A stretch of DNA of 64,000 nt from IMGVR_UViG_3300027770_000027:62001-126000; one strand, 5' to 3'; shown: positions 3,977 to 37,981, counted from the first letter of the stretch. The notes: generated by a model from the sequence alone, not told the origin. Numbers and translations: made by a program.

Positions 3977-4600
3977 TTAGGCTTTAATGGCTCTTCCTTC
4001 TTTGTCTACTAGATATCCATAGAAGTCCACCTCAGGATACTCATCTCCTAATTGTTTGAATGCTTCTATATTCTTTTCCGCGTCGTCATATAATCTAGCC
4101 ACATCAAACTCTTTACTATCTAGATACCTTCTAATGATAACCGCTTTCTTCTCTGCTATATTCAGATTAGGAATCTGTAGATTACCAGCGCGTTCCACAT
4201 ATACCATATCAATGTTGATCCCATGCTTTCTAAAGGTATCTAGGAATACTTCTTTGTTATCGAAATCCGAACGGGCTGTAATAATGATTACTCTACTCTT
4301 AGGATTCCTATGGACATTACCTAGAATACCAATCATCTTATTCACCATAGAAGGAATGGGAACACTCTCCTGATTAAACTTCTTAGCATCCTTGAACTCC
4401 TGGAAGTCTGGTTTTTCTCCCGGTTGCCACTCATAGGTATTGAACTCACTATTGCTAATAGGCTTGGTCTTTCCTTCCGAGTCTGTCACTCCCACCTTAG
4501 CCGTAGTATGGAACAAAGTATCATCTATATCAAACACCGTAAGAGACCCTAGATTATGTCTATGGGTCGTCTCCGTATAATAGTCTTGAAAGCTTTGCAT
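3977..4600 (-). CDS. HAD-superfamily phosphatase (polynucleotide 3'-phosphatase-like); start revised to MQSFQDYYTE
   Basis: FDIDDT (motif I), ITAR (II), K, YDD (IV). Confidence 0.85.
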   Translation of the reverse strand: MQSFQDYYTETTHRHNLGSLTVFDIDDTLFHTTAKVGVTDSEGKTKPISNSEFNTYEWQPGEKPDFQEFKDAKKFNQESVPIPSMVNKMIGILGNVHRNPKSRVIIITARSDFDNKEVFLDTFRKHGINIDMVYVERAGNLQIPNLNIAEKKAVIIRRYLDSKEFDVARLYDDAEKNIEAFKQLGDEYPEVDFYGYLVDKEGRAIKA

Positions 4601-4601
4601 A

Positions 4602-4814
4602 CTATTCACCGGAGATGGTCTCCTTAATATGTTTCTGTACCGCATCAAACAATTCAGTAACCAACCCGCTGATGTTTTCTTCTATCCTATAAGCCTTAAG
4701 GATGGATCTAAAAGTATCTTTCAAGGTAGCATCTTCCTTAGCATCTGGATTAGCTTCTTCCTTTAAGAGTTGTTCATAGATAGATTCTAATTGTAATTGT
4801 TCGCGGTCTTCCAT
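4602..4814 (-). CDS. small late protein with N-terminal targeting-like peptide (MEDREQLQLESIYEQLLKE)
   Basis: ATAAATA box immediately upstream. Confidence 0.75.
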   Translation of the reverse strand: MEDREQLQLESIYEQLLKEEANPDAKEDATLKDTFRSILKAYRIEENISGLVTELFDAVQKHIKETISGE

Positions 4815-4926
4815 AATCTTTATTTATCAATTCATTTATTTTAAAGTACGAGATAACTTCGTTAATAGCGCGGTATTAAAGGGTATTTTATTAGTTTCTT
4901 CTAGAAAAACCTAAAATAGAATTCCC

Positions 4927-4994
4927 TTTTTCTCACTTTTTGAGCCCTTTTTTGCGATTTTTGTCCCCTTTTTCTCAATTTTTGAAAGGTTTTT
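4927..4994. other. phased T5-6 tracts (intrinsically curved DNA)
   Basis: Tracts start at 4927, 4937, 4948, 4958, 4969, 4979 and 4990, a 10.5-bp period. Confidence 0.9.
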
Positions 4995-5011
4995 GCTATT
5001 AAAGTTAGTGT

Positions 5012-5197
5012 TTAATCCTGTTTATGCAGCAAAAAATGGTAGATATTCTTTATTTGATTTTCGAGATCTTTGACCTTTTCCTCTAGATCTTTAATCCTAT
5101 TCCTAGAGTCTTCAATCAATGCATCCCTAGAATCTTTTATTTCATGCCCATACATTTTAGCGGTAAGAGTGGGTCCTGGATAATCGTAGTCATTCAT
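5012..5197 (-). CDS. hypothetical coiled-coil protein
   Basis: ORF track; packed operon. Confidence 0.7.
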   Translation of the reverse strand: MNDYDYPGPTLTAKMYGHEIKDSRDALIEDSRNRIKDLEEKVKDLENQIKNIYHFLLHKQD

Positions 5198-5198
5198 A

Positions 5199-5561
5199 TT
5201 AATAAGAAGGTTTTCTAAAGGTTTCCTTGCCGTTTAGATAATACACTAGCTCTTCGTCTTTTTCCAGATACTTTATGGTAAAACGATAAGGTTTATTAGG
5301 CTTAAATGTAATCCCATCTACCTGATGCCTCGGCATACTATTAGTACAGACCTCGCCATCGTACTGATGCAATAGCTTCTCATCATCTTCAATGTCTGAA
5401 AGATATAGATCATTTCCGCAAGAGAACTCCATATCAAAGGCTTGTTCAATATGTTCTACTGAACCACAGGCCTTATACAATTCATTGTAGTCAGACTCTT
5501 GATCTTCAGTCAAAGGAAACATTAAATATACATCAAATACTGTGTTACTCATATCTTTCAT
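5199..5561 (-). CDS. hypothetical acidic protein
   Basis: ORF track; packed operon. Confidence 0.75.
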   Translation of the reverse strand: MKDMSNTVFDVYLMFPLTEDQESDYNELYKACGSVEHIEQAFDMEFSCGNDLYLSDIEDDEKLLHQYDGEVCTNSMPRHQVDGITFKPNKPYRFTIKYLEKDEELVYYLNGKETFRKPSY

Positions 5562-5572
5562 ATTTACTCATA

Positions 5573-5758
5573 TTAGACAAGTTTCACTGCCAGTTGAGTG
5601 TCGTAAGGGCCTTCCTTCTTACCATTATAGACAATGTACTCGTTCTGGTAGGCTTCTTGGATTTCATAAGTGCCTTCTTCATTTGTGGCAACAACAATAA
5701 GGTCTCCGTGCTTAGCTTTAAGTGCTTCCAGCTTTTCAATTAGTTCTGAGATCTTCAT
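5573..5758 (-). CDS. hypothetical protein (MKISELIEKLE..HGDL.V type)
   Basis: N-terminus typical of small phage proteins. Confidence 0.75.
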   Translation of the reverse strand: MKISELIEKLEALKAKHGDLIVVATNEEGTYEIQEAYQNEYIVYNGKKEGPYDTQLAVKLV

Positions 5759-5788
5759 ATTAGTATACTTCCTTTGATGTGTTTCGTA

Positions 5789-6016
5789 CTAGTCAACAAG
5801 ATCCACTTGAATGCTAATCCCGTTGAATGTGGCTCCGATTCCTTTGTATTGGAATCGATCATCTGCAATACACTTCAAGGCTTCTTCCACTGCTCCAGCC
5901 GTACGAAGATCAACCGTATCATGTAGTTTACTATACGTACAATTCACCATCATACGACCATCTACACCCCAGGTCCGAACGATCCGCAGCTTCTGTTTCG
6001 ATTTGATCTTCATCAT
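5789..6016 (-). CDS. hypothetical protein (start revised to MMKIK)
   Basis: TTCCCC promoter with leaderless ATGATG. Confidence 0.75.
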   Translation of the reverse strand: MMKIKSKQKLRIVRTWGVDGRMMVNCTYSKLHDTVDLRTAGAVEEALKCIADDRFQYKGIGATFNGISIQVDLVD

Positions 6017-6035
6017 GTATATATTATGTAGGAGG

Positions 6036-6679: not shown

Positions 6680-6685
6680 ATTAAT

Positions 6686-6886: not shown

Positions 6887-6887
6887 A

Positions 6888-10303: not shown

Positions 10304-10849
10304 TCACTGTTGAACGCCGTAGAGACTCGCGAGCAAGGACTCGGCTTTATTCAAAGCACCTGGAATACTTGTCTTGTCTACTTTCAATTCTTTAGATGGC
10401 ATAATACCAAATGAATCATAAGCTCTGATGAGTATATGACTTGAGTTATGTATTAAAGTAACTGTGTTGGTAATGTCAGTTAATTGAGCAGTACGACCCT
10501 TGTTTGGATGTTCTGGATCTAATACCTTATGAGTGCTAAGAAAGATACGAGTCCAATCATAACCTTGTTTGCTTAAATCTTTAATCACTTGCGGGGCTTC
10601 CATCAATAGATCTTGAAGGTTTCCATTCTTTAGGTCTTTACTAATAGACTTCTCTCTAGACCAATCTTCTTCACCAAAAACCAAACCATGTATAGAACCA
10701 AAGAACTCTGCTCTAGTAGATAGGTATTGAAACATCTTTGCCAGGACTTCAGGGTCTCTATTAACCTTTGCCTTATTAACGCTCAAAGCATTGGACTCTA
10801 GGACCTTTGCGTAGGCCTGTTCTAATAAAATGGAGTCTTTGGTTCTCAT
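10304..10849 (-). CDS. putative internal virion protein with MRTKDSILLEQAY leader
   Basis: Shared N-terminal peptide; late operon. Confidence 0.8.
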   Translation of the reverse strand: MRTKDSILLEQAYAKVLESNALSVNKAKVNRDPEVLAKMFQYLSTRAEFFGSIHGLVFGEEDWSREKSISKDLKNGNLQDLLMEAPQVIKDLSKQGYDWTRIFLSTHKVLDPEHPNKGRTAQLTDITNTVTLIHNSSHILIRAYDSFGIMPSKELKVDKTSIPGALNKAESLLASLYGVQQ

Positions 10850-10853
10850 ATGA

Positions 10854-11408
10854 TTAACGTTTCATTCCACCGATTCTAAAGCTTTGTCCAGCTTTTGCAT
10901 GAACTTCTGCAGGGGAGTCTTCCAGGAAACGAACACTAACTGTGGTGCCTTGATTTACATTATAGTCCTGACCTTTAATGGTTAAAATTAAATTACCGTT
11001 CTTTGTGTAATCTTGATCTCCGGAAGATCTCTTAACATCCTGAATAACGCCTTGAGCAAATACTCCATCCTCTAATTCAAACTTTGTATGAGCAACACTA
11101 CCACCAGATCCAGGCACTGTAGCACTACCATCATCACGACCATAACCAGAGGTTTGTTTATGACCAGTGACTCTAGACAAAGACACTTCTTTACCAACCA
11201 GGGTCTTTAGTTTAGCAAAGGCATTATCCTTTTCAAAAGATGGGAGCATATTGAATCTAGGAATAAGATTATTAGCTTCGTCTTCAGATATAGGAGCTTG
11301 TTGATCCTTGAAATGCATTGCATCAATCTCTTTAGCTCTCCTGGAACTAATCCCTTCTTGGACAGTTTCATAGGCTTGCTCAAGTAAAATAGTGTCTTTA
11401 GTTCTCAT
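10854..11408 (-). CDS. putative internal virion protein with MRTKDTILLEQAY leader (start revised)
   Basis: ATAAATA 9 nt upstream of the ATG at 11408. Confidence 0.8.
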   Translation of the reverse strand: MRTKDTILLEQAYETVQEGISSRRAKEIDAMHFKDQQAPISEDEANNLIPRFNMLPSFEKDNAFAKLKTLVGKEVSLSRVTGHKQTSGYGRDDGSATVPGSGGSVAHTKFELEDGVFAQGVIQDVKRSSGDQDYTKNGNLILTIKGQDYNVNQGTTVSVRFLEDSPAEVHAKAGQSFRIGGMKR

Positions 11409-11419
11409 TGTTATATTAT

Positions 11420-11770
11420 TTATTCTCCTTGTTCGTCTTCTTCTGTAGGATGAGACATATAATCCCACTTATCCCAGCTACTCATTTCAGGTTCTTCTTC
11501 TTCATCTTGATCATTGCTTTGATCCTTAGCTTTAATGAGAGCGGCTAGTTGAACTGCTAACTTGGCAATCTCTGGGTCCATTACTCTTTGATGCCCGTAT
11601 TGACCCCAATGAGCTAGTTCATCCAATACAGCTTCCATACTATGAGGAAGAGTCCCACTTGGTTTATTTGGATTTGCTAGGATATCTTTAGCCTCTTTCT
11701 CTGGATTGAATTCCATGACAAGCTTATAAGCTTCATGTATATTGGTTAATTCTTTACTCGGGAGTCTCAT
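11420..11770 (-). CDS. putative internal virion protein (MRLPSKELTNIHEAYKLVME)
   Basis: ATAAATA upstream; variant leader; acidic tail. Confidence 0.75.
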   Translation of the reverse strand: MRLPSKELTNIHEAYKLVMEFNPEKEAKDILANPNKPSGTLPHSMEAVLDELAHWGQYGHQRVMDPEIAKLAVQLAALIKAKDQSNDQDEEEEPEMSSWDKWDYMSHPTEEDEQGE

Positions 11771-13911: not shown

Positions 13912-14673
13912 CTACACGGCAGATTTGCTCAATTCAAACTCAACCTGGTAACTACTCCTGAAGACATCTAAATCCCATTGAGGTCCTAATTTGTTCTTTA
14001 GTTGTTGAGCTAATCTTTTGTATAAAGTAACTTTGCCGTGATCAGAAGACTTAGCTGAGAATCCAATGATGGTATACTTCTTAGAGTTCTTAGACAAATA
14101 TTCATTCACTATCTTCAACACAGTGGCCATAACTCTAAATGCTTTACCAGTGCCAGTCATGTCTGCGGTGCCTTGAATATTCTTATCCTCATCTGTATAA
14201 TGGAACATAATAGTTAACCTTTGAGGATATTCCGGATCTTCTAATGTCAGTACGGTGTATAAAACTTTTGGGTTATTAGGATCAGGGAAGAATATAAAAC
14301 CCCCATCCCTTTCAGACCATTGGTATGGATAGGGATTATCCATAGATTCTTCTACTACACTTTCAGGTACACAGTTAGGTACTTGTTTACCATTCTTGGT
14401 CTTAGTGCCTATTGGTTTATAACCATCCCAACAGGTGTTTTTCATTCTCTTTTTTTCTTCCAGATACTCTGAGAATGTAGGAATGGTTGCTTCTGTATGA
14501 GAATGATACTTGGCTAACCGTTTCTTTAACATCTTAACCCAACCAATGTTATTAGTACGTTTAGCCTCTTTCATATCCTTATGAGCTGCTGCAGCTTTGT
14601 GAGACCAGAACTGTTTTTTATCTGTGTTGGATTCTTTCTTGCCCGGCTTAGCTTTCTTGGATATATCACTCAT
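13912..14673 (-). CDS. modular late protein with CWDGY...KVPNCVP motif (start revised to MSDISK)
   Basis: ATAAATA upstream of 14673; internal IPTFSEYLEE and VVEES. Confidence 0.8.
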   Translation of the reverse strand: MSDISKKAKPGKKESNTDKKQFWSHKAAAAHKDMKEAKRTNNIGWVKMLKKRLAKYHSHTEATIPTFSEYLEEKKRMKNTCWDGYKPIGTKTKNGKQVPNCVPESVVEESMDNPYPYQWSERDGGFIFFPDPNNPKVLYTVLTLEDPEYPQRLTIMFHYTDEDKNIQGTADMTGTGKAFRVMATVLKIVNEYLSKNSKKYTIIGFSAKSSDHGKVTLYKRLAQQLKNKLGPQWDLDVFRSSYQVEFELSKSAV

Positions 14674-14677
14674 ATAT

Positions 14678-15136
14678 CTATTTATTGTTTGATCCCCTCT
14701 TTCCAAAGGCAGGTAATAAATCAAAGGCTATACCATCTTCAATCAATTGAAGAACCGGATCTGATACTTCATACTCTTTAATAGTAATCTTTACTTGTCC
14801 AGTGAACCAATCTTTAAGATGAAGGGCATATGTCTTTTGAGGGCCTAAGCCGGCGTGTTGTAATAACCTGTCCTTAAGATTCTTTCTAGAAGATCCTACA
14901 TACATTACATCTGAAGCACAGTTAAGCTTGGGCATAGCTACATACTCTTTATATTTAAGAGCCAAAAAATCTGCCCGGGTCTTAATCTTATCCCCATTGA
15001 CTTCTTCGATGATATAAACTCCTCTAGTAATGGTTAATGATTTAATATCCTCTAGGTCTGTAATAACCACCTCTTTCTTAGGAACAGCTTTAAGGGCTAA
15101 CTCTGTATCCTTAATAAGGTTTTCGAGATACTTCAT
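14678..15136 (-). CDS. GIY-YIG-like nuclease
   Basis: GVYII...MYVGSS...L.DRL.QH...IE. Confidence 0.6.
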   Translation of the reverse strand: MKYLENLIKDTELALKAVPKKEVVITDLEDIKSLTITRGVYIIEEVNGDKIKTRADFLALKYKEYVAMPKLNCASDVMYVGSSRKNLKDRLLQHAGLGPQKTYALHLKDWFTGQVKITIKEYEVSDPVLQLIEDGIAFDLLPAFGKRGSNNK

Positions 15137-22527: not shown

Positions 22528-22767
22528 TTATTTTTTATGGGTCTTTAGACCAACGTAAGTTCCAAAGAAAGATCCTATACATGCTGGTATTAAAGTCCAA
22601 TGATTGGTGGTATAATTAATAACAGCTACACTTGCCATGACACTAATTAAAAAAGACCAAGTAGAAGCTTTCCATGGTTTGTTGTCTTCTACGGCTTTTA
22701 TGTAATGAGCATAAAAGACATTGGTAAAAAATACAGATAAAAATGTTAAAAGACCTTCTAATATCAT
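22528..22767 (-). CDS. small multi-TM membrane protein
   Basis: Three hydrophobic segments, G.F.GTYVG. Confidence 0.75.
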   Translation of the reverse strand: MILEGLLTFLSVFFTNVFYAHYIKAVEDNKPWKASTWSFLISVMASVAVINYTTNHWTLIPACIGSFFGTYVGLKTHKK

Positions 22768-24851
22768 TGTTTGATCTGATAATAATCAGCAAAGGAAACT
22801 GATTCACTCGTAGGAGCATCATCCAAAACTGCTCGAGTAAGAACGGTTTGTTTAGTTACCTTACCTGTCTGCTTGTTGGCATACTCTTTATGGTTCTTAA
22901 CCAAGGCTCGAGTGATGATAAGTTTTTGACCCTTCTCTACTTCCATAGAGCCATTGGCAAAGTATACATATACATTGCCTTTATCATCTAACATATTGAC
23001 CATGGTAGTAGAACCACCAGTGTCATAATAACCGTAACCCTGTCTTTCAAAGCCCCTGGAACCTGTAACGGTTACTTGAATAGGGCCGTTGTAAGGAAAG
23101 CCGTCCAATCCTTCTACACCCATCTTTTTAAGCTTACGCTTATCATTATAAGACAATTCTCCGATAGGCCCTCCAACAGAACCTACATACTCACTTACCT
23201 GCTCTCCTCTTTCTTTAGAGAGCTTATCCTGATCCTGAGCATCAATGGCTTTGTTATAAGCCGGAAGAATGGAAATCAAATAACCAAGATACTTCTCTGG
23301 AATAGCTCCACTAGATGCTGCACCATTAAGAATGGTTTGAAGATTCTTAAAGTACTCCGTCATATTGGAAGGTCTTTCCAACTGTTTAGCAATATACTCT
23401 TTACCCCATTCAATGACCTTATCAGCCTCATCATTGTACTTCTCTTTATTATTTCTGTAATCATCCAGAGCATTCAACTCTGCCATAGCACCACCACCAG
23501 CTTTAGCTGGACCACCTGCCTTAGCAATGATATCTTCCAATTCACCTGTAATGCCTTTAACAATCTTAGCACTGGTGGGTTCACTGTAATTACCATTTTC
23601 ATTATCTGCATTGGCCTTGGATCTGCTAACGTAACCCAGCTTACGAACATAGGCTAAGGCTACTCCCAAGGTTTCTTTAATGCGGAAGCTATCGTATTTA
23701 GATCTCCCACCTCCACCACCACCTTCACTATCATAATCTCCTTCACCACCCTTCTCTTCCCATTCCCTAAGGCCTTCTGCAATCTTGGAAAGATAATCTG
23801 CAAAGTCCAACATCTTCTTAACACCTTGTTCTCCGCCGGGCAGATAGTCTTTCAGACATTGGCGACCGATGCGCTTGAGTTTGCTCTGCTCGTCTTGCAC
23901 CACAAAGGTAGATGTCCTCTTGCGAGTAGTGTTACAGTGATCACAGAAGCTTGGCTGAGAATTGCCGTAGAGTCTGTGGAGGTCTTCTTCGTGTCCGCTA
24001 TTAGGAACACTGACGATCAGGTTACCGATGTCTGTATGATCTACACGACCGATAAACTTCCATCCACCTGGCAATTGAAGCTGCGGCACTCTGATACGGA
24101 ACTTAACCTTTTTAAGCATCACTCCTCGGCGAGAGTTAACCTTACTTGGGTCATATCTCTTCTCTACCATCTCCTCACCAGTTCTCTCAACGGTGATCAA
24201 AGGAATGCCCTTCTTAGTGGCTCTTTTATTAAGAGCATCTACCTGCTCTACAACCTTATCATACAACTCTTCAACCATAGAAAATTCTTGGTCGAGGATG
24301 TCTGTTACTTCTTTGGTTTCTCCGCCACCAGCTGCAGGAACTTCTTCTGCTTTCTTTTCTGGTTGTGGTTCTGGTTGTACCTGGGTCACAACCTCTGCAG
24401 AGGACTGTGCAGCTTGCGTAGCAATTTGAACAGCTTTAGCGGGAGTTTCTTCTGCGGCCTTAGCAGCTACTGCAACGGTCTGTGCTACGGCTTGTTTAGA
24501 AGAATTTGGCTGAGATTTCAAGGTGTCTAGTAATTGTTTGACTGCTCTCTTAGAAATGACTTCTGAGGTAGTAGGACTCATAGAACCCGCTCGGAAAGCT
24601 TTAATCAATTCAGCTGCCAAGTCTTTGTCTTCAATCTCTGCTAGATTAGGATCCTTGGAAATCTCTAGGACCGCATTCTTAATCAAGGTCTGCAACTGTT
24701 CTGAGCTATACTTCTTTCCGTATTTGTTCTGGAAAACACTACTAGTGTCATTGAACTCTGGATGAGCATAGGAAGGCCAGTTAGAAAGATCAGACACTTT
24801 AACTTGAGCCATTTCGTCTAGAAGATTTTGTACAAAAGAATTGAACTGCAT
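22764..24851 (-). CDS. large late protein with Zn-ribbon (CDHC...GRQC) and C-terminal OB-like domain; start revised to MQFNSF
   Basis: ATAAATAAATA upstream of 24851; Ala/Gln/Pro linker. Confidence 0.8.
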   Translation of the reverse strand: MQFNSFVQNLLDEMAQVKVSDLSNWPSYAHPEFNDTSSVFQNKYGKKYSSEQLQTLIKNAVLEISKDPNLAEIEDKDLAAELIKAFRAGSMSPTTSEVISKRAVKQLLDTLKSQPNSSKQAVAQTVAVAAKAAEETPAKAVQIATQAAQSSAEVVTQVQPEPQPEKKAEEVPAAGGGETKEVTDILDQEFSMVEELYDKVVEQVDALNKRATKKGIPLITVERTGEEMVEKRYDPSKVNSRRGVMLKKVKFRIRVPQLQLPGGWKFIGRVDHTDIGNLIVSVPNSGHEEDLHRLYGNSQPSFCDHCNTTRKRTSTFVVQDEQSKLKRIGRQCLKDYLPGGEQGVKKMLDFADYLSKIAEGLREWEEKGGEGDYDSEGGGGGGRSKYDSFRIKETLGVALAYVRKLGYVSRSKANADNENGNYSEPTSAKIVKGITGELEDIIAKAGGPAKAGGGAMAELNALDDYRNNKEKYNDEADKVIEWGKEYIAKQLERPSNMTEYFKNLQTILNGAASSGAIPEKYLGYLISILPAYNKAIDAQDQDKLSKERGEQVSEYVGSVGGPIGELSYNDKRKLKKMGVEGLDGFPYNGPIQVTVTGSRGFERQGYGYYDTGGSTTMVNMLDDKGNVYVYFANGSMEVEKGQKLIITRALVKNHKEYANKQTGKVTKQTVLTRAVLDDAPTSESVSFADYYQIKQ

Positions 24852-24862
24852 ACTATATTTAT

Positions 24863-25078
24863 TTATCGAGTTAACTCTTTTTCGTCTTCGCAAAAGATAG
24901 ACTCCCATTCTTCAGCAGTGATACCAGACTTAATAAACTCTCTCTCACTTGGACTTAAGTTAGGAAATGCTACTTGGAGAAGAGCTCCATCCTCATATGC
25001 TTCTAACTGCTCTCGAGTGACATCAAGGTTTAGGATTCTTGGAATATGGCTGAGTTGGGATACACGTGCGATTAACAT
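24863..25078 (-). CDS. conserved phage hypothetical protein (Q.AFPNLS..EREFI.SGI...EW)
   Basis: Motif; TTCCCC promoter. Confidence 0.8.
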   Translation of the reverse strand: MLIARVSQLSHIPRILNLDVTREQLEAYEDGALLQVAFPNLSPSEREFIKSGITAEEWESIFCEDEKELTR

Positions 25079-31449: not shown

Positions 31450-31614
31450 TTAGAAACCCTTAGCGGCTGCTGTGTTCTTTTTAGACTTTTTACAAGCCGG
31501 ACATGTACATTTTTCATTTTTACATTTCTTACCCACTGTGCAAGGGCAAGGTGTTTTGGCTTCGTGAACAATTTGATAAGCTTGTTCTAATAGAATAGTG
31601 TCTTTGGTTCTCAT
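31450..31614 (-). CDS. MRTKDTILLEQAY-leader peptide with Cys/Lys-rich metallothionein-like body (start revised)
   Basis: CPC..C...CTC..C in the C-terminal 35 aa. Confidence 0.75.
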   Translation of the reverse strand: MRTKDTILLEQAYQIVHEAKTPCPCTVGKKCKNEKCTCPACKKSKKNTAAAKGF

Positions 31615-31798: not shown

Positions 31799-31822
31799 AT
31801 GATATACTTACCCTAAAAGGGG

Positions 31823-31903
31823 TACGGACGGAGAGACTCGAACTCTCATGCCTTTCGGCGCCAGTTCCTAAGACTGGAGTGTCTGCCATTCCACCACGTC
31901 CGC
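31823..31903 (-). tRNA. trnL: tRNA-Leu(TAG)
   Basis: Cloverleaf, CCAGT-CTTAGGA-ACTGG, long V-arm, no encoded CCA. Confidence 0.95.
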
Positions 31904-31925
31904 TTTTATGTATTTATCCAGAAAA

Positions 31926-32016
31926 TGGTACACCGGGTGGGAATTGAACCCACACCTAGGAGTTATCTACTCAGTACGTGTATAAGACGTCTTGCTCTAC
32001 CGTGAGCTACCGGTGC
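31926..32016 (-). tRNA. tRNA with TAT anticodon (Ile?) and long variable arm
   Basis: ACGT-CTTATAC-ACGT; V-arm GAGT..ACTC; canonical T-arm; ACCA end. Confidence 0.8.
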
Positions 32017-32036
32017 CTGTTGGGTTAAGTATTGTT

Positions 32037-32411
32037 ATGATTAGATTGGTTAAAGCTATCGGAGAAAAATTAAAAGGCAAGCCATTGGCAATGAGATCTC
32101 CTCATTGGGCAACTACTAGACGTCATCACTTAAAAGATCATTCTACATGTGCAGCTTGTGGTGGTACAGAAAAATTACAAGTACACCACAAACAGCCTTA
32201 TCATCTACATCCAGATTTAGAATTGGAACCTACTAATTTGATTACCTTGTGTGAATTTGGAGATATTGATTGTCATTATAATATAGGTCATCATAGAGAC
32301 TGGAAATCTTTTAATCCAAATGTAGTACAAGATGCTGCCGCCAACCTAACAATTATTAACGAAAAGAAAGTGCGCCCGGTTGGGATTGAACCAACGACCA
32401 AGGAATTATGA
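32037..32411 (+). CDS. HNH endonuclease (start revised to MIRLVK)
   Basis: CAACG..L.VHH...NLITLC....CH; TAAGTA box upstream. Confidence 0.9.
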   Translation: MIRLVKAIGEKLKGKPLAMRSPHWATTRRHHLKDHSTCAACGGTEKLQVHHKQPYHLHPDLELEPTNLITLCEFGDIDCHYNIGHHRDWKSFNPNVVQDAAANLTIINEKKVRPVGIEPTTKEL

Positions 32412-32443
32412 GTTCCCTGCTCTGACCACTGAGCTACAGGCGC
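32371..32443 (-). tRNA. tRNA-CAT, probably Ile2 (lysidine type)
   Basis: GGGAA-CTCATAA-TTCCT; body resembles bacterial tRNA-Ile2. Confidence 0.85.
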
Positions 32444-32484
32444 TTATGATAAAATTATAATATATCGTAAGAGGGAAATCAACC

Positions 32485-32668
32485 AGGATGATGTGTTTTT
32501 CTCGCGAGTGTCTGTCACATCGTTCAACGGCCGACCAGCTTGAGCCAATCCATTACCGTCTAAGACCAGTGTTTAAGAAACACCCCTTTCACTAGGGTGT
32601 ACAGCTAGAGGTACTAACTTCAAACTGGACTAACTCTCTCTAGGTTGTCCGGCTAAGCCGGCTCGGAT
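32485..32668 (-). ncRNA. candidate structured RNA of about 185 nt
   Basis: ORF-free and GC-rich; several hairpins with G-U pairs on the minus strand; ATAAATA upstream. Confidence 0.55.
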
Positions 32669-32669
32669 T

Positions 32670-32900
32670 CTATTTATCTAGTTGTTCTACAATATCTTCT
32701 TCTGAAAAAAGACCAGTAGGAGTAAACCCCAAATCTGCTTCAAGTTCTTCAAATCTATAAAGAAATCCTTTAGAGAGATCTTGCTCATCACTATCTTCTT
32801 CAATCTCTCCGGTATACAGACCTTCTCCTCGATATGAGGCGTCTGGCCACTTAGGATCTACATAGTCAATATAATAACGTTTACCGGTTACTGGAATCAT
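32670..32900 (-). CDS. hypothetical acidic protein
   Basis: ORF track. Confidence 0.75.
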   Translation of the reverse strand: MIPVTGKRYYIDYVDPKWPDASYRGEGLYTGEIEEDSDEQDLSKGFLYRFEELEADLGFTPTGLFSEEDIVEQLDK

Positions 32901-32935
32901 ATTTATATATTATAAGAACATTTAAAATATATCAA

Positions 32936-33202
32936 CTATGCTTTGGGTTTTCTTTTAAGAAACTCTGAAACAACTTTGTCTGCTGCTTTGAATTCTGTTG
33001 TATGATTAGCAACTGGCTCGATGTAACGATCCCAAAAGACTTCTGTATCAGGTTCACTACCGAACCTATTCTTGTAATCTACAACAAGAAAGCAACCTTC
33101 CTTTATGTTCACTCTAAACGCCTTCGTTTCTGGACCATCATATACACATTCAGTGCGGACATCCAACAATTGCTTACCTGAAGTTTGAGTTTGCTTTGTC
33201 AT
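32936..33202 (-). CDS. hypothetical protein
   Basis: ORF track. Confidence 0.7.
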   Translation of the reverse strand: MTKQTQTSGKQLLDVRTECVYDGPETKAFRVNIKEGCFLVVDYKNRFGSEPDTEVFWDRYIEPVANHTTEFKAADKVVSEFLKRKPKA

Positions 33203-33226
33203 GTTTAATACTTATAGAAAATAAAT

Positions 33227-33313
33227 CCAACGGCGCTCATGTCTCTGTCTCCCAACCACGGGACACACCAGAGAAATTATACATGGGTCGATGGTATAAT
33301 GAGATTCCGTTGG
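33227..33313 (-). ncRNA. candidate three-way-junction RNA
   Basis: CCAACGG/CCGTTGG and CTCAT/ATGAG closing stem with two inner hairpins. Confidence 0.55.
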
Positions 33314-33432
33314 CCACCAGAAGAGCTCACCGGGTCTTATATGTTACTGGTTAGATAACTTTTGTCCCTTTAAGTGATTTTTTTAAGTGAATCAACACCG
33401 GATCTTGTTTTAAGTGAAAGCCAACACTAAGC

Positions 33433-33532
33433 TTTTCCAGGTTGGATTCGAACCAACGGCGAGCGCTTTGTCCCGGCATTTTGGCCCTTAACCATGAGGG
33501 AGCACTAGATCTACCAACTGAGTTACTGGAAA
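33433..33532 (-). ncRNA. tRNA-like RNA with expanded, anticodon-less arm
   Basis: Perfect acceptor stem and T-arm GTTGG-TTCGAAT-CCAAC; extra hairpin replaces the anticodon loop. Confidence 0.75.
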
Positions 33533-33536
33533 ATTA

Positions 33537-33634
33537 TGGAGACTAGGTTGGTCATTTCATCCAACATCCTGTACTGGTTCCTCAGAGTTTTATACTTAAA
33601 CTACTAGTCATTTGAAATTAAAGTGTCTAGTCTC
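33537..33634 (-). ncRNA. candidate structured RNA ending in CCA
   Basis: GAGACTAG/CTAGTCTC closing stem; motif shared with 34991-35029. Confidence 0.5.
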
Positions 33635-33641
33635 TCCCAGT

Positions 33642-33708
33642 GTCACACAACTACTTTACCAGATTAATCCGGTTACTCACTCCACATTGTGTAGAGGGCA
33701 TGTGTCGC
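33642..33708 (-). ncRNA. candidate small three-way-junction RNA
   Basis: CTCTACA/TGTGGAG and ACCGGA/TCTGGT hairpins within an ACACA/TGTGT stem. Confidence 0.45.
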
Positions 33709-33715
33709 AAAAAAA

Positions 33716-33803
33716 TGGTCGCCTAGGCCGGACTCGAACCGGCACGAGGAGTGCTCCTCGACAGATTTTAAGTCTGTTGTGTCTGCCATTTCACCACTAG
33801 GCG
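33716..33803 (-). tRNA. trnL: tRNA-Leu(TAA)
   Basis: Cloverleaf, long V-arm, CCA. Confidence 0.95.
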
Positions 33804-33806
33804 TGT

Positions 33807-33818
33807 CTATCAAAGATC
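33807..33818 (-). promoter_or_regulatory. boxA-like element GATCTTTGATAG
   Basis: Just downstream of a TTCCC promoter; identical copy at 35052-35063. Confidence 0.6.
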
Positions 33819-33871
33819 ATTTATTATGTTAATATCTTAACATCACTTACTGGGAAGGTCACCTGGGAAAT

Positions 33872-33945
33872 TGGTAGTCCGCCCAGGGCTCGAACCTGGA
33901 ATAAGAGATTCAAAATCTCCTGTGTTACCATTACACCAACGGACT
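33872..33945 (-). tRNA. trnQ: tRNA-Gln(TTG)
   Basis: Cloverleaf, CCA. Confidence 0.95.
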
Positions 33946-33948
33946 ATA

Positions 33949-34024
33949 TGGTCGTGATGGAGAGACTCGAACTCTCGATACCTTGGTCCCAAACCAAGTG
34001 CCATAGCCGCTAGGCGACATCACG
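33949..34024 (-). tRNA. trnP: tRNA-Pro(TGG)
   Basis: Cloverleaf, CCA. Confidence 0.95.
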
Positions 34025-34035
34025 TTATCTAAAAA

Positions 34036-34109
34036 TGGTTGACCATGAAGGTAACGCTCCTTCGTCCTTCGATTATCAGTCGAGAGCTCTACTTTTAAGC
34101 TAATGGTCA
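34036..34109 (-). tRNA. trnI: tRNA-Ile(GAT) with non-canonical D- and T-loops
   Basis: T-loop AGCGTTA, D-loop AAAAGTA; CCA. Confidence 0.85.
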
Positions 34110-34112
34110 ATA

Positions 34113-34187
34113 TGGAGCCAACAGTCGGGATTGAACCGACGACCGGTGGTTTACAAAACCACTGCTCTACCACTGAGCTATGCTGGC
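34113..34187 (-). tRNA. trnT: tRNA-Thr(TGT)
   Basis: Cloverleaf, CCA. Confidence 0.95.
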
Positions 34188-34191
34188 AATG

Positions 34192-34264
34192 TGGAGCCTA
34201 AGGGATTCGAACCCTTCACCTATAGCTTGCAAAGCTACCGCTCTACCGAATGAGCTAAGACCCC
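34192..34264 (-). tRNA. trnA: tRNA-Ala(TGC)
   Basis: G3-U70 pair; no encoded CCA. Confidence 0.95.
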
Positions 34265-34270
34265 TTAAAA

Positions 34271-34344
34271 TGGTGGACCATGAGGGTAACGCTCCCTCTT
34301 GATTCGGTTAAAAGCCGAGTGCTTTACTTTTAAGCTAATGGTCC
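34271..34344 (-). tRNA. trnK: tRNA-Lys(TTT) with non-canonical D- and T-loops
   Basis: Same scaffold as tRNA-Ile(GAT); CCA. Confidence 0.85.
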
Positions 34345-34348
34345 GAAA

Positions 34349-34424
34349 TGGTTGCACAGGTCGGATTCGAACCGACGATCTTTTGGTTATGAGCCAAATG
34401 AGTTGACCTCTTCTCTACCGTGCG
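34349..34424 (-). tRNA. initiator-type tRNA-Met(CAT)
   Basis: C1-A72 mismatch; anticodon stem has only two G-C pairs. Confidence 0.85.
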
Positions 34425-34431
34425 ATTAAAA

Positions 34432-34506
34432 TGGCTCCTGGAGTAGGACTCGAACCTACAACGTCCTCGTTAACAGCGAGGTGCTCTACCATTGAGCTAT
34501 CCAGGA
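34432..34506 (-). tRNA. trnN: tRNA-Asn(GTT)
   Basis: Cloverleaf, GCCA end. Confidence 0.95.
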
Positions 34507-34580: not shown

Positions 34581-34591
34581 ATTAAAATTAT

Positions 34592-34855: not shown

Positions 34856-34898
34856 TGTTTATATATTAGAGGTTTATTATGGGAAGGTCACTAAAAAA

Positions 34899-34984
34899 TG
34901 GTGGGAGATGTGGGTAACGATCCCACCGAGCATGAATGCGCCAGATTTACAGTCTGGACCGTCTCCTTAACGGTATACTCTCCC
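34899..34984 (-). tRNA. trnY: tRNA-Tyr(GTA), atypical T-loop ATCGTTA
   Basis: CCAGA-CTGTAAA-TCTGG, V-arm, CCA. Confidence 0.9.
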
Positions 34985-35127
34985 AAAAACTCCTAGGGGT
35001 TGGTCTCATTATTAAGAGGTGCCCTAGGACATGATGAAAACTGCTATGTAACTATCAAAGATCTAACTTAATTATGGTTTAAGTATACCAGCAGTCATGG
35101 GGAACTGCTCCTGGAAATTTATTTATC

Positions 35128-37030
35128 CTACACGTTGCTGATTTCCAAATTAATTTCTTCATCACTTAGTCGGCAATAAAGAGTTTCACCTGTGTCTGGA
35201 CAAATTTGAATCTTTACAAAACCTTCAGCTACCATGTATTTCAGATTTCGCATAATTGCTTCGCGAAGATATTCTTTATATTCTTTGTCGGTCATCATCA
35301 TTTCATCGTCTTTCATTGTTAGAATCTTAAAGGATCTTACCGGGAAAGGCACCTTGTTATTCAAGGCGGTGAGAACTGAAACGATGAGGAAATTTTTTAT
35401 CTATGCAAATAAATTCAATAGGCCCAAATCCTCTTTGTACTGCTAGGTACTCTTTATTGATCAGGGTAATTACTTTGTAATGAGTAACTTCTTCTTCTTC
35501 CTTGGGGGAATTCTTATCGGAAGCAAGTGCCGGAATAAAAACTGCGGCGGCTAATAGTAAACTTAAAGTCAATTTCATAGGTTGTTTTTATTATAGTCTT
35601 TTATTTGTTCTTTGCAAGCTTCTTTTCTCGCCGTTGATCTAAAAAGGCGATTATTTCTACACCAAGAACAACGACCATGATTGCGGCAAGTCCAGTCAAA
35701 AGTCTTACTGGTACGTCCATAATAGGGTTTGCGGTTTTCTTTACCATGTAAAATAGATTTATCTAAGCTCATGTAAAAATTACCGGATGATGTGCTTCTT
35801 TTTTAGCTAAAAAACAAGGTACACAAGATACTCTATTTTCTACACGATAACGGGCAAATCTTTTATCTAGACGCAATCCACAATGAACACAGGATTCATC
35901 AACAATTACCGGTTCATCATTAAACATTAGAACTTGTTTGTTCTTTTGGTTTTTGCTCATTTTTTTTCGACCAGTCTATTTCAGACCAATTTTCTACTAT
36001 TTTTTTAAGATTTTCTTTACGGCGTTTACTTCCTTTTCCGTTTGACATAATCTATTCAACCAAAACAGCGGCATTGAGTCGATCAACCTCTGAAAGAATA
36101 GCACCGTCAACGTCTTCTACAACTTCACCGATTACTCGCTGAGTACTTTCTGGGTGATAAGAATAGAATCCTTGATCATTGCGAACAATTTCACCTAGTA
36201 CAGAGCCATTACGGTTATCATAGACGTCAAAACGACTTCCTGTCTTAGTTTGGATATGGATTAGTTTATTCATGTGTATTTATTTTATATGTAGTTTAGT
36301 AAGAGTCACCGGAGTCTGAAGAATTAATACAATCTAATGCAAGCCACACATCAGAACTTATTTTAGGAGTTGTTGTTACAAGAGTTGCAGTAGCCCCGGA
36401 TGCAAATGATAGAGTGTATAGATGTTTGTTGTTACGTGTGAAGGTTCCTAGCAAAACATTTGTAGTAGTTCTGTAAAAATTGTAGGTGAGATATGTATCA
36501 TATTGTACATATATGGTAGAAAGGGAAGGGAATCTCATCTTATATTTAGGAAATAATGAATATAGTACAGAGAATAAGAATACTAAAGCCTAAACTTAAA
36601 CATCCCAGGATTACTACTTTTTGTTTATATGAAAACATTTCTGTATTTCTATAAGGTAAAGGGGAATAAATAGGCCGGCCGTTGTCATAACTAATTAAAT
36701 ATTTCATAGGTGATTACCATTTTTAAGTTCTTCCAAATAACCACACAGGTGTAATACTTTATAGAAAGCTTTTTTATTATTTTGCTTCTTATTAAAACGG
36801 GCAGTATCTGGACAAATATGTTCAGCCATGGCTGTATGAGGGCCTCCTGCAAAAATACCCGCCGGAATAGTAACCTTGCACAAAGTAGAACCTCCTAGAT
36901 GAGACAATCTTTTAGATTGGTCCATGCGTTTTTGTCCAAATGGAGGTTCTACGTAACGACGCCAATGGCGAAAGGTGATCTTCCACCCGTGTTTCTTCAA
37001 GCTATTGTAGTCTAGTGGTTGCTTGCTCAT
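35128..37030 (-). other. small hypothetical CDSs (35128-35316, 35357-35578 with signal peptide, 35575-35772, 35769-35960, 36052-36273, 36296-36538, 36704-37030)
   Basis: ORF track with overlaps; 35575-35772 has a CRNHG.C.WC motif. Confidence 0.7.
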
Positions 37031-37039
37031 GATTTTATA

Positions 37040-37678
37040 TTAGGTAGAAATGATGGGAACTTCAATGCTCTTGTGGTGTATATCATTAGCATTTTTTGTT
37101 CTCATAATTTTCTCTACCTCTTTTGAAAGTGATATGGGTTTACGAAATACATCCCAACCACAATCTAAGATTTTGCTTTCCTTGTTTTGAGGAAGGGAAT
37201 ACTGAAGATCTCCATGACTATGTCCACAAAGATGAAAGGCCCCTTTACCCCGACCATCCCAAACTTGAATAGGAAAGTGGAAACAAACAAAGAATTTACC
37301 ATTAGAGGTAAATGTAAAATAATGGCCCAGAAACTTAACTTTACAAGTTAACCCCATGGCAGTATAATCTGCAGCTGCCCTATTCCAAGGATTATTATGA
37401 TTACCGTGCAGCATCCAAATCTCTCCAATTCTCAATTGTCTTAGAATATCTTTATAACGATCCCAAGAAGTGTTTAGGCAAAAATCGCCCAAGTGCAAAA
37501 GAATACCATCCGGGCCTACGGTTTTATTAATAGTTTGAATGATGTCTTCATCCATTTCTTGAGGAGATTTATATCCCCTCTTTGCATAAAGAAATTCTTT
37601 ATTATGACCAAAATGTGTGTCTGAGGTGACAAACATCCTATCATATTCTTCTGTCGGAGATTTATACATTACTTCCAT
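37040..37678 (-). CDS. metallophosphoesterase (type often found beside RNA ligases)
   Basis: SDTHFGH, HLGDF, GNH, HFP, GHSH. Confidence 0.9.
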   Translation of the reverse strand: MEVMYKSPTEEYDRMFVTSDTHFGHNKEFLYAKRGYKSPQEMDEDIIQTINKTVGPDGILLHLGDFCLNTSWDRYKDILRQLRIGEIWMLHGNHNNPWNRAAADYTAMGLTCKVKFLGHYFTFTSNGKFFVCFHFPIQVWDGRGKGAFHLCGHSHGDLQYSLPQNKESKILDCGWDVFRKPISLSKEVEKIMRTKNANDIHHKSIEVPIIST

Positions 37679-37711
37679 AACTTTTACAATTTTTGACCTA
37701 AATAATATTAT

Positions 37712-37981
37712 ATGAAATTTAATGAACTAGTCAATTTTTTATTAGAAAAATACAGTAAACCATGTACTAAAGTAACCGGGCAACAATCTTCTACTCGAGA
37801 TGATAAAAAATATATGAGATGTGCTAAAGTAGATGGTAAACTTAAAAGAGTTCATTATGGAGACCCTAATATGAGAATTAAGAAGTCTAACCCTAAAAAC
37901 CGCAAAAGTTATAGGGCTAGACATCATTGTAGCTCAGCCAAACCAGGAACTCCCGAATATTTTAGCTGCAAGAACTGGTAA
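37712..37981 (+). CDS. small basic late protein (DUF5754/DUF6321-like) with MKFNELVNFLLE leader
   Basis: V.YGD..M....RKSYRARH.C...SC..W; TAAATA upstream. Confidence 0.8.
   Translation: MKFNELVNFLLEKYSKPCTKVTGQQSSTRDDKKYMRCAKVDGKLKRVHYGDPNMRIKKSNPKNRKSYRARHHCSSAKPGTPEYFSCKNW

What the first reader, a model, noticed from the sequence alone, without database searches (positions are those of the whole stretch)
3977..37981. Second tag class (F..(Y/F)...E), including a possibly virion-packaged phosphatase
Seen: the HAD phosphatase starts MQSFQDYYTE, the 695-aa protein starts MQFNSFVQNLLDE and ends ESVSFADYY, 37712 starts MKFNELVNFLLE, and 13912-14673 has internal IPTFSEYLEE. Known: these resemble the T4 targeting sequence MKTYQEFIAE. 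Inference: an end-healing HAD enzyme and a large Zn-ribbon/OB protein are co-injected with the genome and act before phage gene expression.
Basis: inference. Interest (0 to 1): 0.6.

Follow-up and report, generated by a model that had tools for sequence, protein, structure and literature searches.

The report
T4-style capsid-targeting tags on phage proteins
An uncultured 227-kb T4-like lake phage puts short end tags, matching phage T4's known "load me into the capsid" signal, on several unrelated proteins including a phosphatase, so its injected cargo may be readable from sequence, though packaging is not shown.

Summary
All four quoted peptides are in the sequence as described. They are more than chance. 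The window lies in a complete 227-kb T4-superfamily phage from lake water. It has a gp23-like capsid protein, a scaffold, a portal, an S77 (gp21-type) prohead protease and a gp55 late sigma factor.

The phosphatase leader (M-x-x-F-x-x-[YF]-[LIY]-x-E) is kept across hundreds of metagenomic homologs. It matches T4's capsid targeting sequence at the positions shown experimentally to matter: 4 and 7 for targeting, 8 and 10 for cleavage.

The leaders are detachable modules:
- They fold as low-confidence helices on flexible linkers.
- They are swapped between orthologs.
- They are absent from homologs in other phage types.
- They also occur at C-termini.

In this genome every tagged gene sits behind, or is coupled to, the late-promoter-like element used by structural genes (10/10 tagged versus 7/80 untagged genes, p=3e-9). 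A cyanophage enzyme with the same leader was detected in purified virions.

Best reading: these are T4-type capsid-targeting propeptides on internal, ejected cargo (confidence about 0.6). Packaging, cleavage, injection and early action remain untested. The fourth, internal motif is part of a conserved tag plus Cys-Trp cassette, not an N-terminal tag.

The parts
3977..4600 (-). HAD-superfamily phosphatase (207 aa), DIDDT motif at residues 24-28, with an N-terminal leader
   Evidence: Translation. PHROG 415 'polynucleotide kinase' at E 8e-9. 682 homologs. Model has pLDDT 88; best VIA match is the T4 Pnkp phosphatase domain, Z 13.8.
4571..4600 (-). Leader MQSFQDYYTE (class 2a; F4, Y7, Y8, E10)
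   Evidence: Conserved as M-x-x-F-x-x-[YF]-[LIY]-x-E in homologs; F4 and E10 at least 90%. Residues 1-10 have mean pLDDT 48, and the folded core starts at residue 18.
4602..4814 (-). 70-aa gene translationally coupled to the HAD gene; starts MEDREQLQLESIYEQLLKEE (class-1-like leader)
4821..4826 (-). TAAATA late-promoter-like element, 6 nt before the ATG of the 70-aa gene; it drives the pair of 70-aa gene and HAD gene
13912..14673 (-). 253-aa basic protein (pI 9.5): basic N-terminal part, internal tag, CW module, weak DUF6934-like C-terminal part
14455..14484 (-). Internal tag IPTFSEYLEE (residues 64-73)
   Evidence: Second-best non-self PSSM-2a hit in the proteome, tied with g238 at score 14.2.
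14368..14433 (-). CW module CWDGYKPIGTKTKNGKQVPNCV (residues 81-102), which follows the tag
   Evidence: The same tag + CW cassette is found in HAD homologs P0017 and P0032, at the C-terminus of P0193, and in cyanophage Syn33_105 as ...MTYQEFQEKCWKGYK....
14679..14684 (-). TAAATA element, 5 nt before the ATG of the 253-aa gene
22764..24851 (-). 695-aa protein: leader, low-confidence helical region 1-185, folded core 189-680 (Cys cluster, C-terminal OB-like barrel), C-terminal tag
   Evidence: PHROG 2319 at E 2e-47.
24813..24851 (-). Leader MQFNSFVQNLLDE (class 2b), followed by a conserved M-A
   Evidence: Conserved as M-x-F-[ND]-x-[FL]-[VI]-x-x-[LI]-[LF]-x-E-M-A. Helix 3-13 has pLDDT about 53.
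22767..22808 (-). C-terminal tag SESVSFADYYQIKQ
   Evidence: NES[VI]SF[AV][DE]YY in close relatives. It is absent from many relatives that end ...KQTYLTRADLR, and from Aeh1p240. Helix 687-694 follows a low-pLDDT linker.
24860..24865 (-). TAAATA element, 8 nt before the ATG of the 695-aa gene
37712..37981 (+). 89-aa very basic protein (pI 10, 25% K+R, 5 Cys); candidate internal DNA-binding protein
37712..37747 (+). Leader MKFNELVNFLLE (class 2b)
   Evidence: F3 and E12 at least 90% conserved. Leader length varies from 12 to about 35 aa. 2a-type leaders replace it in P0237 and P0252. 80-aa homologs in HTVC106P, CRP-738 and Kolga have no leader.
37699..37704 (+). TAAATA element, 7 nt before the ATG of the 89-aa gene
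10304..11770 (-). Three adjacent genes with class-1 leaders (MRTKD[ST]ILLEQAY..., MRLPSKELTNIHEAYKLVME), behind TAAATA elements
31450..31614 (-). 54-aa basic protein with a class-1 leader MRTKDTILLEQAY, coupled to a gene that has a TAAGTA element
43643..44035 (-). 130-aa protein with a class-1 leader MRDKDSIQLEKSY, behind a TAAATA element

Best explanation
The peptides are T4-type capsid targeting sequences. Each is a short amphipathic helix at a protein end, tethered by a flexible linker and ending in [LIVY]-x-E. The proposed mechanism is that late in infection the tag docks its protein onto the gp22-like scaffolding core of the prohead. The gp21-type S77 protease then cuts after the Glu, leaving the mature protein free inside the head to leave with the DNA. 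Candidate cargo in this phage: a Pnkp-like HAD phosphatase; the 695-aa Cys-cluster/OB-like protein, which is tagged at both ends; a small, very basic 89-aa protein analogous to T4 internal proteins; and, elsewhere in the genome, a 900-aa multi-domain nucleotidyltransferase-like protein tagged at both ends, plus several small proteins. Shown here: the tags exist; they are conserved, modular and exchangeable; they match T4's functional positions; the T4-type head machinery is present; and tagged genes share the structural genes' upstream element. Inferred: docking to the scaffold, cleavage, presence in virions, and ejection.
For: (1) Match to the experimental determinants. In T4 IPIII, targeting depends on residues 4 and 7 and processing on residues 8 and 10 (PMC9026906). 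The HAD family has F4, [YF]7, [LIY]8 and E10, with F4 and E10 at least 90% conserved. T4 ipI, ipII and ipIII sequences were verified. (2) Specificity. The DNA pattern hits this genome only at the HAD gene, hits T4 at ipII and ipIII (plus gp61.1), and gives 0 reversed-control hits. (3) Machinery. MCP PHROG 138 at E 3e-86; scaffold PHROG 237; portal PHROG 213; protease PF03420 at E 1e-21, with T4's GELNHP and GVSSR catalytic motifs. The MCP has an L-N-E site at residue 60. (4) The tags are add-ons. The HAD leader has pLDDT 48, and the Pnkp-type fold matches start at model residues 10-16. Both tags of the 695-aa protein are helices beyond low-pLDDT linkers. The Aeh1 homolog has neither tag. Homologs of the 89-aa protein in non-T4-like phages lack the leader. 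(5) The tags are exchangeable. P0173 and P0174 are 72% identical but carry a class-2b and a class-1 leader respectively. HAD homolog P0041 carries a class-1 leader, and P0017 and P0032 insert a CW module behind the leader. (6) Late regulation. TAA[AG]TA peaks sharply 5-8 nt before ATG (47 genes). It lies before TerL, the tail tube and many large structural genes, and before 0 of 8 replication genes. The phage encodes a gp55 homolog (E 7.5e-12). All 15 tagged genes have the element or are coupled to a gene that has it, against 63 of 253 others (p=3e-9). Inside the window the split is 10/10 against 7/80. (7) Experimental precedent. Cyanophage S-SM1 protein SSM1_190 (T4-GC190) starts MKKFSAFLNE. 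It is the only forward-strand hit of the relaxed pattern in that genome. Its family is 33-36% identical to the C-terminal domain of this phage's doubly tagged 900-aa protein. T4-GC190 was detected in purified S-SM1 virions (PMC3037559).
Against: There are no virion proteomics, no cleavage data and no cultured relative for this phage. The HAD family has no match in 50,697 cultured-phage records. Almost every HAD homolog keeps some leader, so for that family 'add-on' rests on the model and on fold comparison. AphA alignments begin at model residue 4. One occurrence is internal (253-aa protein). T4 gp61.1, an uncharacterised small protein encoded beside the primase gene, also starts MKTFKEFIKE, so the motif may not be exclusive to packaged proteins. 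In more distant HAD homologs the upstream signal is TATAAT-like rather than TAAATA, and one large subfamily (MIKKRFKEFVGSG...) lacks the terminal Glu. The T4 gp23 cleavage site is not conserved in alignment. Only 2 of 10 long HAD-bearing contigs show an S77 protease, and all 10 are fragments, 12-77% complete. The tag sets used for the Fisher tests were chosen after looking at the data.
Confidence: 0.6

Rival explanations
1. The tags are short linear motifs that dock these proteins onto some other hub, such as the sliding clamp, single-strand-binding protein, RNA polymerase or a membrane complex, rather than onto the prohead core.
For: Occurrence at N-termini, C-termini and internally is typical of docking motifs. 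The DNA polymerase ends in ...TDLFDLFE, a hydrophobic-acidic motif of similar flavour. The cargo looks like nucleic-acid enzymes. T4 gp61.1, encoded beside the primase gene, bears the motif.
Against: Tagged genes use the structural-gene element and not the TATAAT-type signal of replication genes. The match is to the T4 capsid targeting sequence at its four functional positions. The cyanophage enzyme bearing the motif was found in virions. The near-invariant terminal Glu fits a protease site.
Confidence: 0.15
2. Each leader is an intrinsic part of its own protein family, for example an oligomerisation or regulatory helix. The resemblance among families and to T4 would then be convergence in an AT-rich genome whose N-termini are rich in K, F, N, E and L.
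For: Nearly all HAD homologs keep a leader. AphA, one of the better-scoring fold matches, aligns from model residue 4. Loose motif versions occur internally at background rates: [FY]x[DE][FY] at 0.0012 per site.
Against: The same leader types sit on at least four unrelated folds. They are swapped between 72%-identical orthologs and are missing from homologs in other phage types. They have low pLDDT and flexible linkers. They are enriched at protein ends (p=3e-6), and the reversed-pattern control gives zero hits.
Confidence: 0.12
3. The N-terminal sequences are constrained at the RNA level, as 5' coding sequence needed to translate leaderless late mRNAs, and not as peptides.
For: The late-type element lies only 5-8 nt from the ATG and there is no Shine-Dalgarno sequence, so the mRNAs may be leaderless.
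Against: Structural genes with the same element have unrelated N-termini. The conservation is at the amino-acid level across different codons, as seen when comparing T4, S-SM1 and this phage. The same peptide occurs at C-termini and internally. T4 uses it without leaderless mRNAs.
Confidence: 0.05

Closest known systems
Capsid targeting sequence (CTS) of phage T4 internal proteins IPI, IPII, IPIII (Mullaney & Black 1996, as reviewed in PMC9026906)
   Same: About 10-aa N-terminal peptide. Aromatic residues at positions 4 and 7, an aliphatic residue at 8 and Glu at 10. A gp21-type protease and a gp22-type scaffold are encoded. Cargo includes small basic proteins. The rest of the cargo protein is otherwise unconstrained.
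   Different: The head proteins here are only about 33-35% identical to T4 and cyanophage counterparts. There are longer 12-13-aa variants (F3, [FL]6, V7, L10, L11, E), a third variant (D-x-x-LLE-x-AY), C-terminal copies preceded by S/N-E, an internal copy fused to a CW module, and enzymes of 200-900 aa as cargo. None of this is tested experimentally.
Cyanomyovirus T4-GC190 'cytidylyltransferase', a virion protein of S-SM1 (Sullivan et al. 2010, PMC3037559)
   Same: It starts MKKFSAFLNE, the same leader type. It is homologous (33-36% identity) to the C-terminal domain of this phage's tagged 900-aa protein. It is an enzyme-like protein found in particles.
   Different: It is a separate gene in cyanophages, whereas here the domain is part of a three-part fusion. 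The paper does not link its leader to targeting. Whether the leader is cleaved is unknown.
Propeptides of head and ejection proteins in phiKZ-like giant phages (201phi2-1, phiKZ, SPN3US), cut after Glu by a gp21-related protease (PMC9026906, PMC5694885)
   Same: Many different internal proteins are processed after Glu by a T4-related prohead protease. Processing at both N- and C-termini is known; T4 Alt is an example.
   Different: Those phages have unrelated capsid contents and a different cleavage motif context. No short transferable targeting consensus has been defined for them.
Encapsulin cargo-loading peptides and bacterial microcompartment encapsulation peptides (own knowledge)
   Same: Short terminal peptides on flexible linkers that load unrelated enzymes into a protein shell. 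They occur at either terminus and are interchangeable.
   Different: Those peptides bind the shell protein directly and are not removed. There is no homology, only analogy.

Membership tests
T4-type capsid targeting sequence | Located at the extreme N-terminus, about 10-19 residues | tested here: met
   Met for the HAD protein (10 aa), the 695-aa protein (13 aa) and the 89-aa protein (12 aa). Not met for the 253-aa protein, where it is internal at residues 64-73.
T4-type capsid targeting sequence | Hydrophobic or aromatic residues at positions 4 and 7 (targeting determinants in IPIII) | tested here: met
   HAD has F4 and Y7; across the family F4 is at least 90% conserved and position 7 is Y or F. 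The 695-aa and 89-aa leaders are shifted by one position (F3, [FL]6, V7), so the match there is partial.
T4-type capsid targeting sequence | Processing determinants: an aliphatic residue two before a Glu at the end of the peptide ([LI]-x-E) | tested here: met
   LLDE, FLLE and YLEE in three of the proteins. HAD has YYTE, while most of its family has [LI]-x-E. E10 and E12 are at least 90% conserved. One HAD subfamily lacks the Glu.
T4-type capsid targeting sequence | The phage encodes a gp21-type prohead protease and a gp22-type scaffolding core | tested here: met
   PF03420 at E 1e-21 with GELNHP and GVSSR motifs. Scaffold PHROG 237. A 75-aa basic core-like protein lies between them.
T4-type capsid targeting sequence | The peptide is dispensable for, and separate from, the cargo fold | tested here: met
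   Low pLDDT and flexible linkers. Homologs without tags exist. Orthologs have swapped tags.
T4-type capsid targeting sequence | The tagged protein is present in proheads or virions and the peptide is removed | not testable with these tools
   No proteomics exist for this phage. The only indirect support is that leader-bearing T4-GC190 was found in S-SM1 virions.
T4-type capsid targeting sequence | The peptide is sufficient to load a foreign protein | not testable with these tools
   This needs a fusion experiment.
HAD superfamily phosphatase, Pnkp-like 3'-phosphatase | DxDxT motif I on strand 1 and a Rossmann-like HAD core | tested here: met
   DIDDT at residues 24-28. D24, D26 and T28 are invariant. 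The model has pLDDT 88.
HAD superfamily phosphatase, Pnkp-like 3'-phosphatase | Specific kinship with polynucleotide 3'-phosphatases rather than with other HAD phosphatases | tested here: inconclusive
   T4 Pnkp phosphatase domain: Z 13.8, 133 of 142 residues aligned. Clostridial Pnkp1: Z 13.4. AphA scores 12.4 and lipin/Pah 12.3, so these are near ties. PHROG 415 at E 8e-9. No kinase domain. The PDB sequence profile search found nothing.
T4-type late promoter (gp55-dependent, TATAAATA) | A -10-like A/T element before late genes, plus a gp55 homolog | tested here: inconclusive
   TAA[AG]TA peaks 5-8 nt before ATG at structural genes and not at replication genes. A gp55 homolog is present. Transcript starts were not observable because the RNA run is held only as contigs.

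The most novel reading that the evidence does not exclude
This uncultured freshwater lineage of T4-like jumbo phages may use a sequence-readable address system. It would consist of three interchangeable tag variants, usable at either protein end and removed by the S77 protease, which load 15 or more different proteins into the capsid. The cargo would include a nucleic-acid end-repair kit: a Pnkp-like 3'-phosphatase, plus a 900-aa fusion of a polymerase-beta-like nucleotidyltransferase, a ligase-like KxDG domain and a cytidylyltransferase-like domain. This kit would be injected with the DNA and act before any phage gene is expressed, for example against host nucleases that cut tRNA or DNA ends.
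Probability: 0.3. Interest if true: 0.75.

Novelty: new variant of a known kind. Interest (0 to 1): 0.6.

Why it matters
If the tags work as in T4, the injected protein cargo of uncultured T4-superfamily phages could be predicted from sequence alone. The tags are found in hundreds of metagenomic contigs and in cyanophages. Proteins injected with the DNA are the first phage weapons to meet host defences, and for environmental phages they are almost unknown. The observation also suggests that the T4 targeting signal is ancient, is portable across the superfamily, and can be used at C-termini. That widens its use as an engineering handle for loading proteins into phage heads.

Tried and rejected
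- Near-identity DNA search of 20 kb against cultured phages found only tRNA matches.
- The HAD protein has no tblastn match in cultured phages.
- The exact T4 late promoter TATAAATA is not enriched before structural genes. The shorter TAA[AG]TA is.
- The search for related loci with the scaffold protein returned only a fragment of the same phage, so no scaffold alignment could be built.
- Reads: the only RNA run is held as contigs that cover the whole 5.9-kb stretch. No transcript start, strand or level can be read from it, and DNA carry-over cannot be excluded.
- Foldseek on the 695-aa model gave no match at E<=0.001, only weak OB/SSB rows.
- The PDB sequence profile search for the HAD family found nothing.
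- The S77 search in 10 long HAD-bearing contigs gave 2 positives. All 10 contigs are fragments, so neither co-occurrence nor its absence is shown.
- In distant HAD homologs the TAAATA element is not conserved upstream, so late-class regulation is claimed for this genome only.
- Literature search for the CW-module sequences found nothing.
- The large representative-protein search was not used, as the operators advised.

Full report
CONTEXT

The window is bases 62001-126000 of a single 227,352-bp virus record. CheckV rates the record 100% complete. It comes from a freshwater lake metagenome. No cultured phage is close at the DNA level.

The genome belongs to the T4 superfamily:
- Major capsid protein: PHROG 138 at E 3e-86, about 35% identical to cyanomyovirus gp23 and 33% to T4 gp23.
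- Scaffold, portal and head-closure proteins.
- Tail sheath, tail tube and large terminase.
- DNA polymerase, clamp loader, UvsX, gp41-like helicase and gp46/47 homologs.
- An S77 prohead protease: PF03420 at E 1e-21, keeping T4 gp21's GELNHP and GVSSR catalytic motifs.
- A gp55 late sigma factor homolog at E 7.5e-12.

I called 268 genes with a simple codon-usage script. Gene numbers (gNNN) refer to that list.

OBSERVATION

The HAD gene starts at the ATG at window 4600. That ATG lies one base after the stop codon of the upstream 70-aa gene, which is the common coupling arrangement in this genome. T4 ipII and ipIII start MKTYQEFIAE, and ipI starts MKTFKEF.

Three checks show this is not chance:
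- A DNA pattern for M-x-x-[FY]-x-[DEQ]-[FY]-x-x-E hits this genome once, at the HAD gene. It hits T4 three times (ipII, ipIII and gp61.1). The reversed control gives zero hits in all four records.
- Scoring matrices built from homologs' leaders place 4 of the 9 best non-self hits at residues 1-3 of proteins (p=3e-6).
- The stricter motif [ST][FY]x[DE][FY] is about five times denser at protein ends than inside proteins.

THE LEADERS ARE CONSERVED

The HAD protein has 682 metagenomic homologs of the same length and none in cultured phages. Nearly all start M-x-x-F-x-[DEQ]-[YF]-[LIY]-x-E. A variable linker of about 10 residues follows, then the catalytic DIDDT. F4 and E10 are as conserved as catalytic residues.

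A review of the T4 work states that in IPIII targeting depends mainly on residues 4 and 7, and processing on residues 8 and 10 (PMC9026906). The HAD family consensus matches all four positions.

The 695-aa family keeps M-x-F-[ND]-x-[FL]-[VI]-x-x-[LI]-[LF]-x-E-M-A. The 89-aa family keeps F3 and E12, while the leader between them varies from 12 to about 35 residues.

THE LEADERS ARE MODULES, NOT PARTS OF THE FOLDS

- HAD model (pLDDT 88): residues 1-10 average pLDDT 48, and the core begins at residue 18. The best fold matches, the T4 and clostridial Pnkp phosphatase domains, begin at model residues 10-16.
- 695-aa model: the leader (helix 3-13) and the C-terminal tag (helix 687-694) are separated from the confident core (189-680) by low-confidence stretches.
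- The Aeromonas phage Aeh1 homolog consists of the core only. Many metagenomic relatives end at ...KQTYLTRADLR without the C-terminal tag.
- Homologs of the 89-aa protein in non-T4-like phages (pelagiphages HTVC106P and Kolga, roseophage CRP-738) are 80 aa and have no leader.
- Tags are swapped. P0173 and P0174 are 72% identical over 515 residues. One carries MNFINIIENVLEEM and the other MLFKDQQLLEEAYLSIYESE.
- One HAD homolog carries the D-x-x-LLE-x-AY leader. Two others insert a CWxGYK...VPNCV module between leader and enzyme.
- Members of the 89-aa family carry either leader shape.

C-TERMINAL AND INTERNAL COPIES

Three proteins end in the same kind of peptide, each preceded by S/N-E:
- SESVSFADYYQIKQ (695-aa protein)
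- SESIISFKEFLFKT (g036)
- SEIMTYKDYLYK (g057)

After correcting its start to the ATG behind a late-type element, g036 reads MNFREFFTEAGK.... Like the 695-aa protein, it is therefore tagged at both ends.

The internal IPTFSEYLEE of the 253-aa protein is followed by a CW module. The same cassette occurs in cyanophage Syn33_105, a very basic 454-aa protein encoded in the structural gene cluster (...MTYQEFQEKCWKGYK...). This copy cannot be an N-terminal address. It may be a processing or docking site inside a basic multi-module protein, but that is inference.

REGULATION

The hexamer TAA[AG]TA shows a sharp peak 5-8 nt before start codons: 47 genes, against a background of 0-3 per position. It lies before the large terminase, the tail tube and many large structural genes. 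It lies before none of eight confirmed replication genes (the seven plus the helicase). Several of those carry TATAAT-type signals instead.

Together with the gp55 homolog, I read it as this phage's late promoter. That is an inference, because no transcript ends could be seen.

All 15 tagged genes have the element, or are coupled within 12 nt to a gene that has it, against 63 of 253 other genes (p=3e-9). Within the window's block of 90 small genes the split is 10/10 against 7/80. The tag lists were compiled after looking at the data, so these p-values are indicative only.

In distant HAD homologs the upstream signal is TATAAT-like, so this argument holds for this genome only.

EXPERIMENTAL ANCHOR

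The C-terminal domain of g036 is 33-36% identical to the cyanomyovirus 'cytidylyltransferase' T4-GC190. Sullivan et al. 2010 detected T4-GC190 in purified S-SM1 virions (PMC3037559).

That S-SM1 protein starts MKKFSAFLNE. It is the only forward-strand hit of the relaxed pattern in the S-SM1 genome. The Syn19 and Syn33 orthologs have the same leader.

WHAT THE CARGO IS

- HAD protein: a HAD phosphatase whose closest fold is the polynucleotide 3'-phosphatase domain of T4 Pnkp (Z 13.8). Other HAD phosphatases score within about 1.5 Z.
- 695-aa protein: no clear relative of known function. There is a Cys cluster and a weak OB/SSB-like C-terminal barrel.
- 89-aa protein: very basic (pI 10) with five cysteines, four of them invariant across the family, in the manner of T4 internal proteins.

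VERDICT

The best explanation is a T4-type capsid-targeting and propeptide system extended to enzymes, to C-termini and to several tag variants (confidence about 0.6).

Rival readings are:
- another docking hub (0.15);
- helices intrinsic to each family (0.12);
- RNA-level constraints on leaderless mRNAs (0.05).

Packaging, cleavage, ejection and 'action before phage gene expression' are untested.

This is a new variant of a known kind.

Noticed in passing
whole genome; e.g. window 4815-4826, 14674-14684, 24852-24865, 37699-37711: About 50-65 genes have TAA[AG]TA exactly 5-8 nt before the ATG and no Shine-Dalgarno sequence. This suggests gp55-type late promoters that give leaderless mRNAs.
   Followed up: partly
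window e.g. upstream of 10269, 26548, 27860, 29192, 34855, 43547, 47755 (minus-strand genes): A second upstream signal class: CTTCCCC, then about 17 nt, then TATAAT-like, then about 6 nt, then ATG. It lies before many small genes and, in TATAAT form, before some replication genes. It is probably an early or middle promoter, and also nearly leaderless.
   Followed up: no
window 1-3900 (genome about 60.1-65.9 kb): This stretch has about 51% G+C in a 36% G+C genome. It has no convincing ORFs and no Rfam match. Its nature is unexplained.
   Followed up: partly
L002:3845-6547 (+) = genome 31845-34547: A 900-aa protein tagged at both ends. It has an N-terminal part with a polymerase-beta-like G-S...D-I-D motif (seen by eye), DUF6267 with a ligase-like KWDG motif (seen by eye), and a cytidylyltransferase-like C-terminal domain. 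In cyanophages these are adjacent separate genes (T4-GC71, T4-GC190).
   Followed up: partly
L022:667-831 (-) = T4 gene 61.1: T4 gp61.1, an uncharacterised 54-aa protein, starts MKTFKEFIKE, a near-perfect capsid targeting sequence. It may be an unrecognised T4 head peptide, or it may show that the motif is not exclusive to packaged proteins.
   Followed up: no
window 14368-14433; L016:3041-4405 (Syn33_105); P0017, P0032, P0193: A CWxGYK-x(5-9)-K-x-G-K-x-VPNCV mini-module of about 22 aa recurs on unrelated phage proteins, usually right after a tag. It has no Pfam family, and no paper was found by a sequence-string search.
   Followed up: partly
window 22764-24851 and homologs P0127-P0198: The leader of the 695-aa family is always followed by M-A (..L-x-E-M-A). 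Several database entries start at that Met. It may be a second translation start giving an untagged isoform, or simply gene-caller choice.
   Followed up: no
P0204, P0210, P0215, P0228, P0248, P0283, P0318 (homologs of window 37712-37981): Some members of the 89-aa basic family carry an extra hydrophobic C-terminal stretch of 20-25 residues after the conserved ...SCKNW. It may be a membrane anchor.
   Followed up: no
window 31821-34506 and L003:2840-3073: tRNA clusters. ARAGORN finds 11 tRNAs in the window and Rfam finds 12. Three more lie in the preceding 14 kb. They sit between the small-gene blocks.
   Followed up: no
L003:1131-1727 (+) = genome 49131-49727: A 198-aa protein with a signal-peptide-like N-terminus, a PSCyt2/DUF1549 domain (typical of Planctomycetes) and a C-terminal tag ...SEIMTYKDYLYK. 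It may hint at the host. A secreted-looking protein carrying a tag is also puzzling.
   Followed up: no
L001:7437-7664 (-) = genome 162437-162664: A 75-aa protein lies between the protease and scaffold genes. It starts MNSKQLISKFISQLVE and has a very basic tail (pI 10.5). It looks like a prohead-core protein of the T4 gp67/gp68 kind, with its own leader.
   Followed up: no
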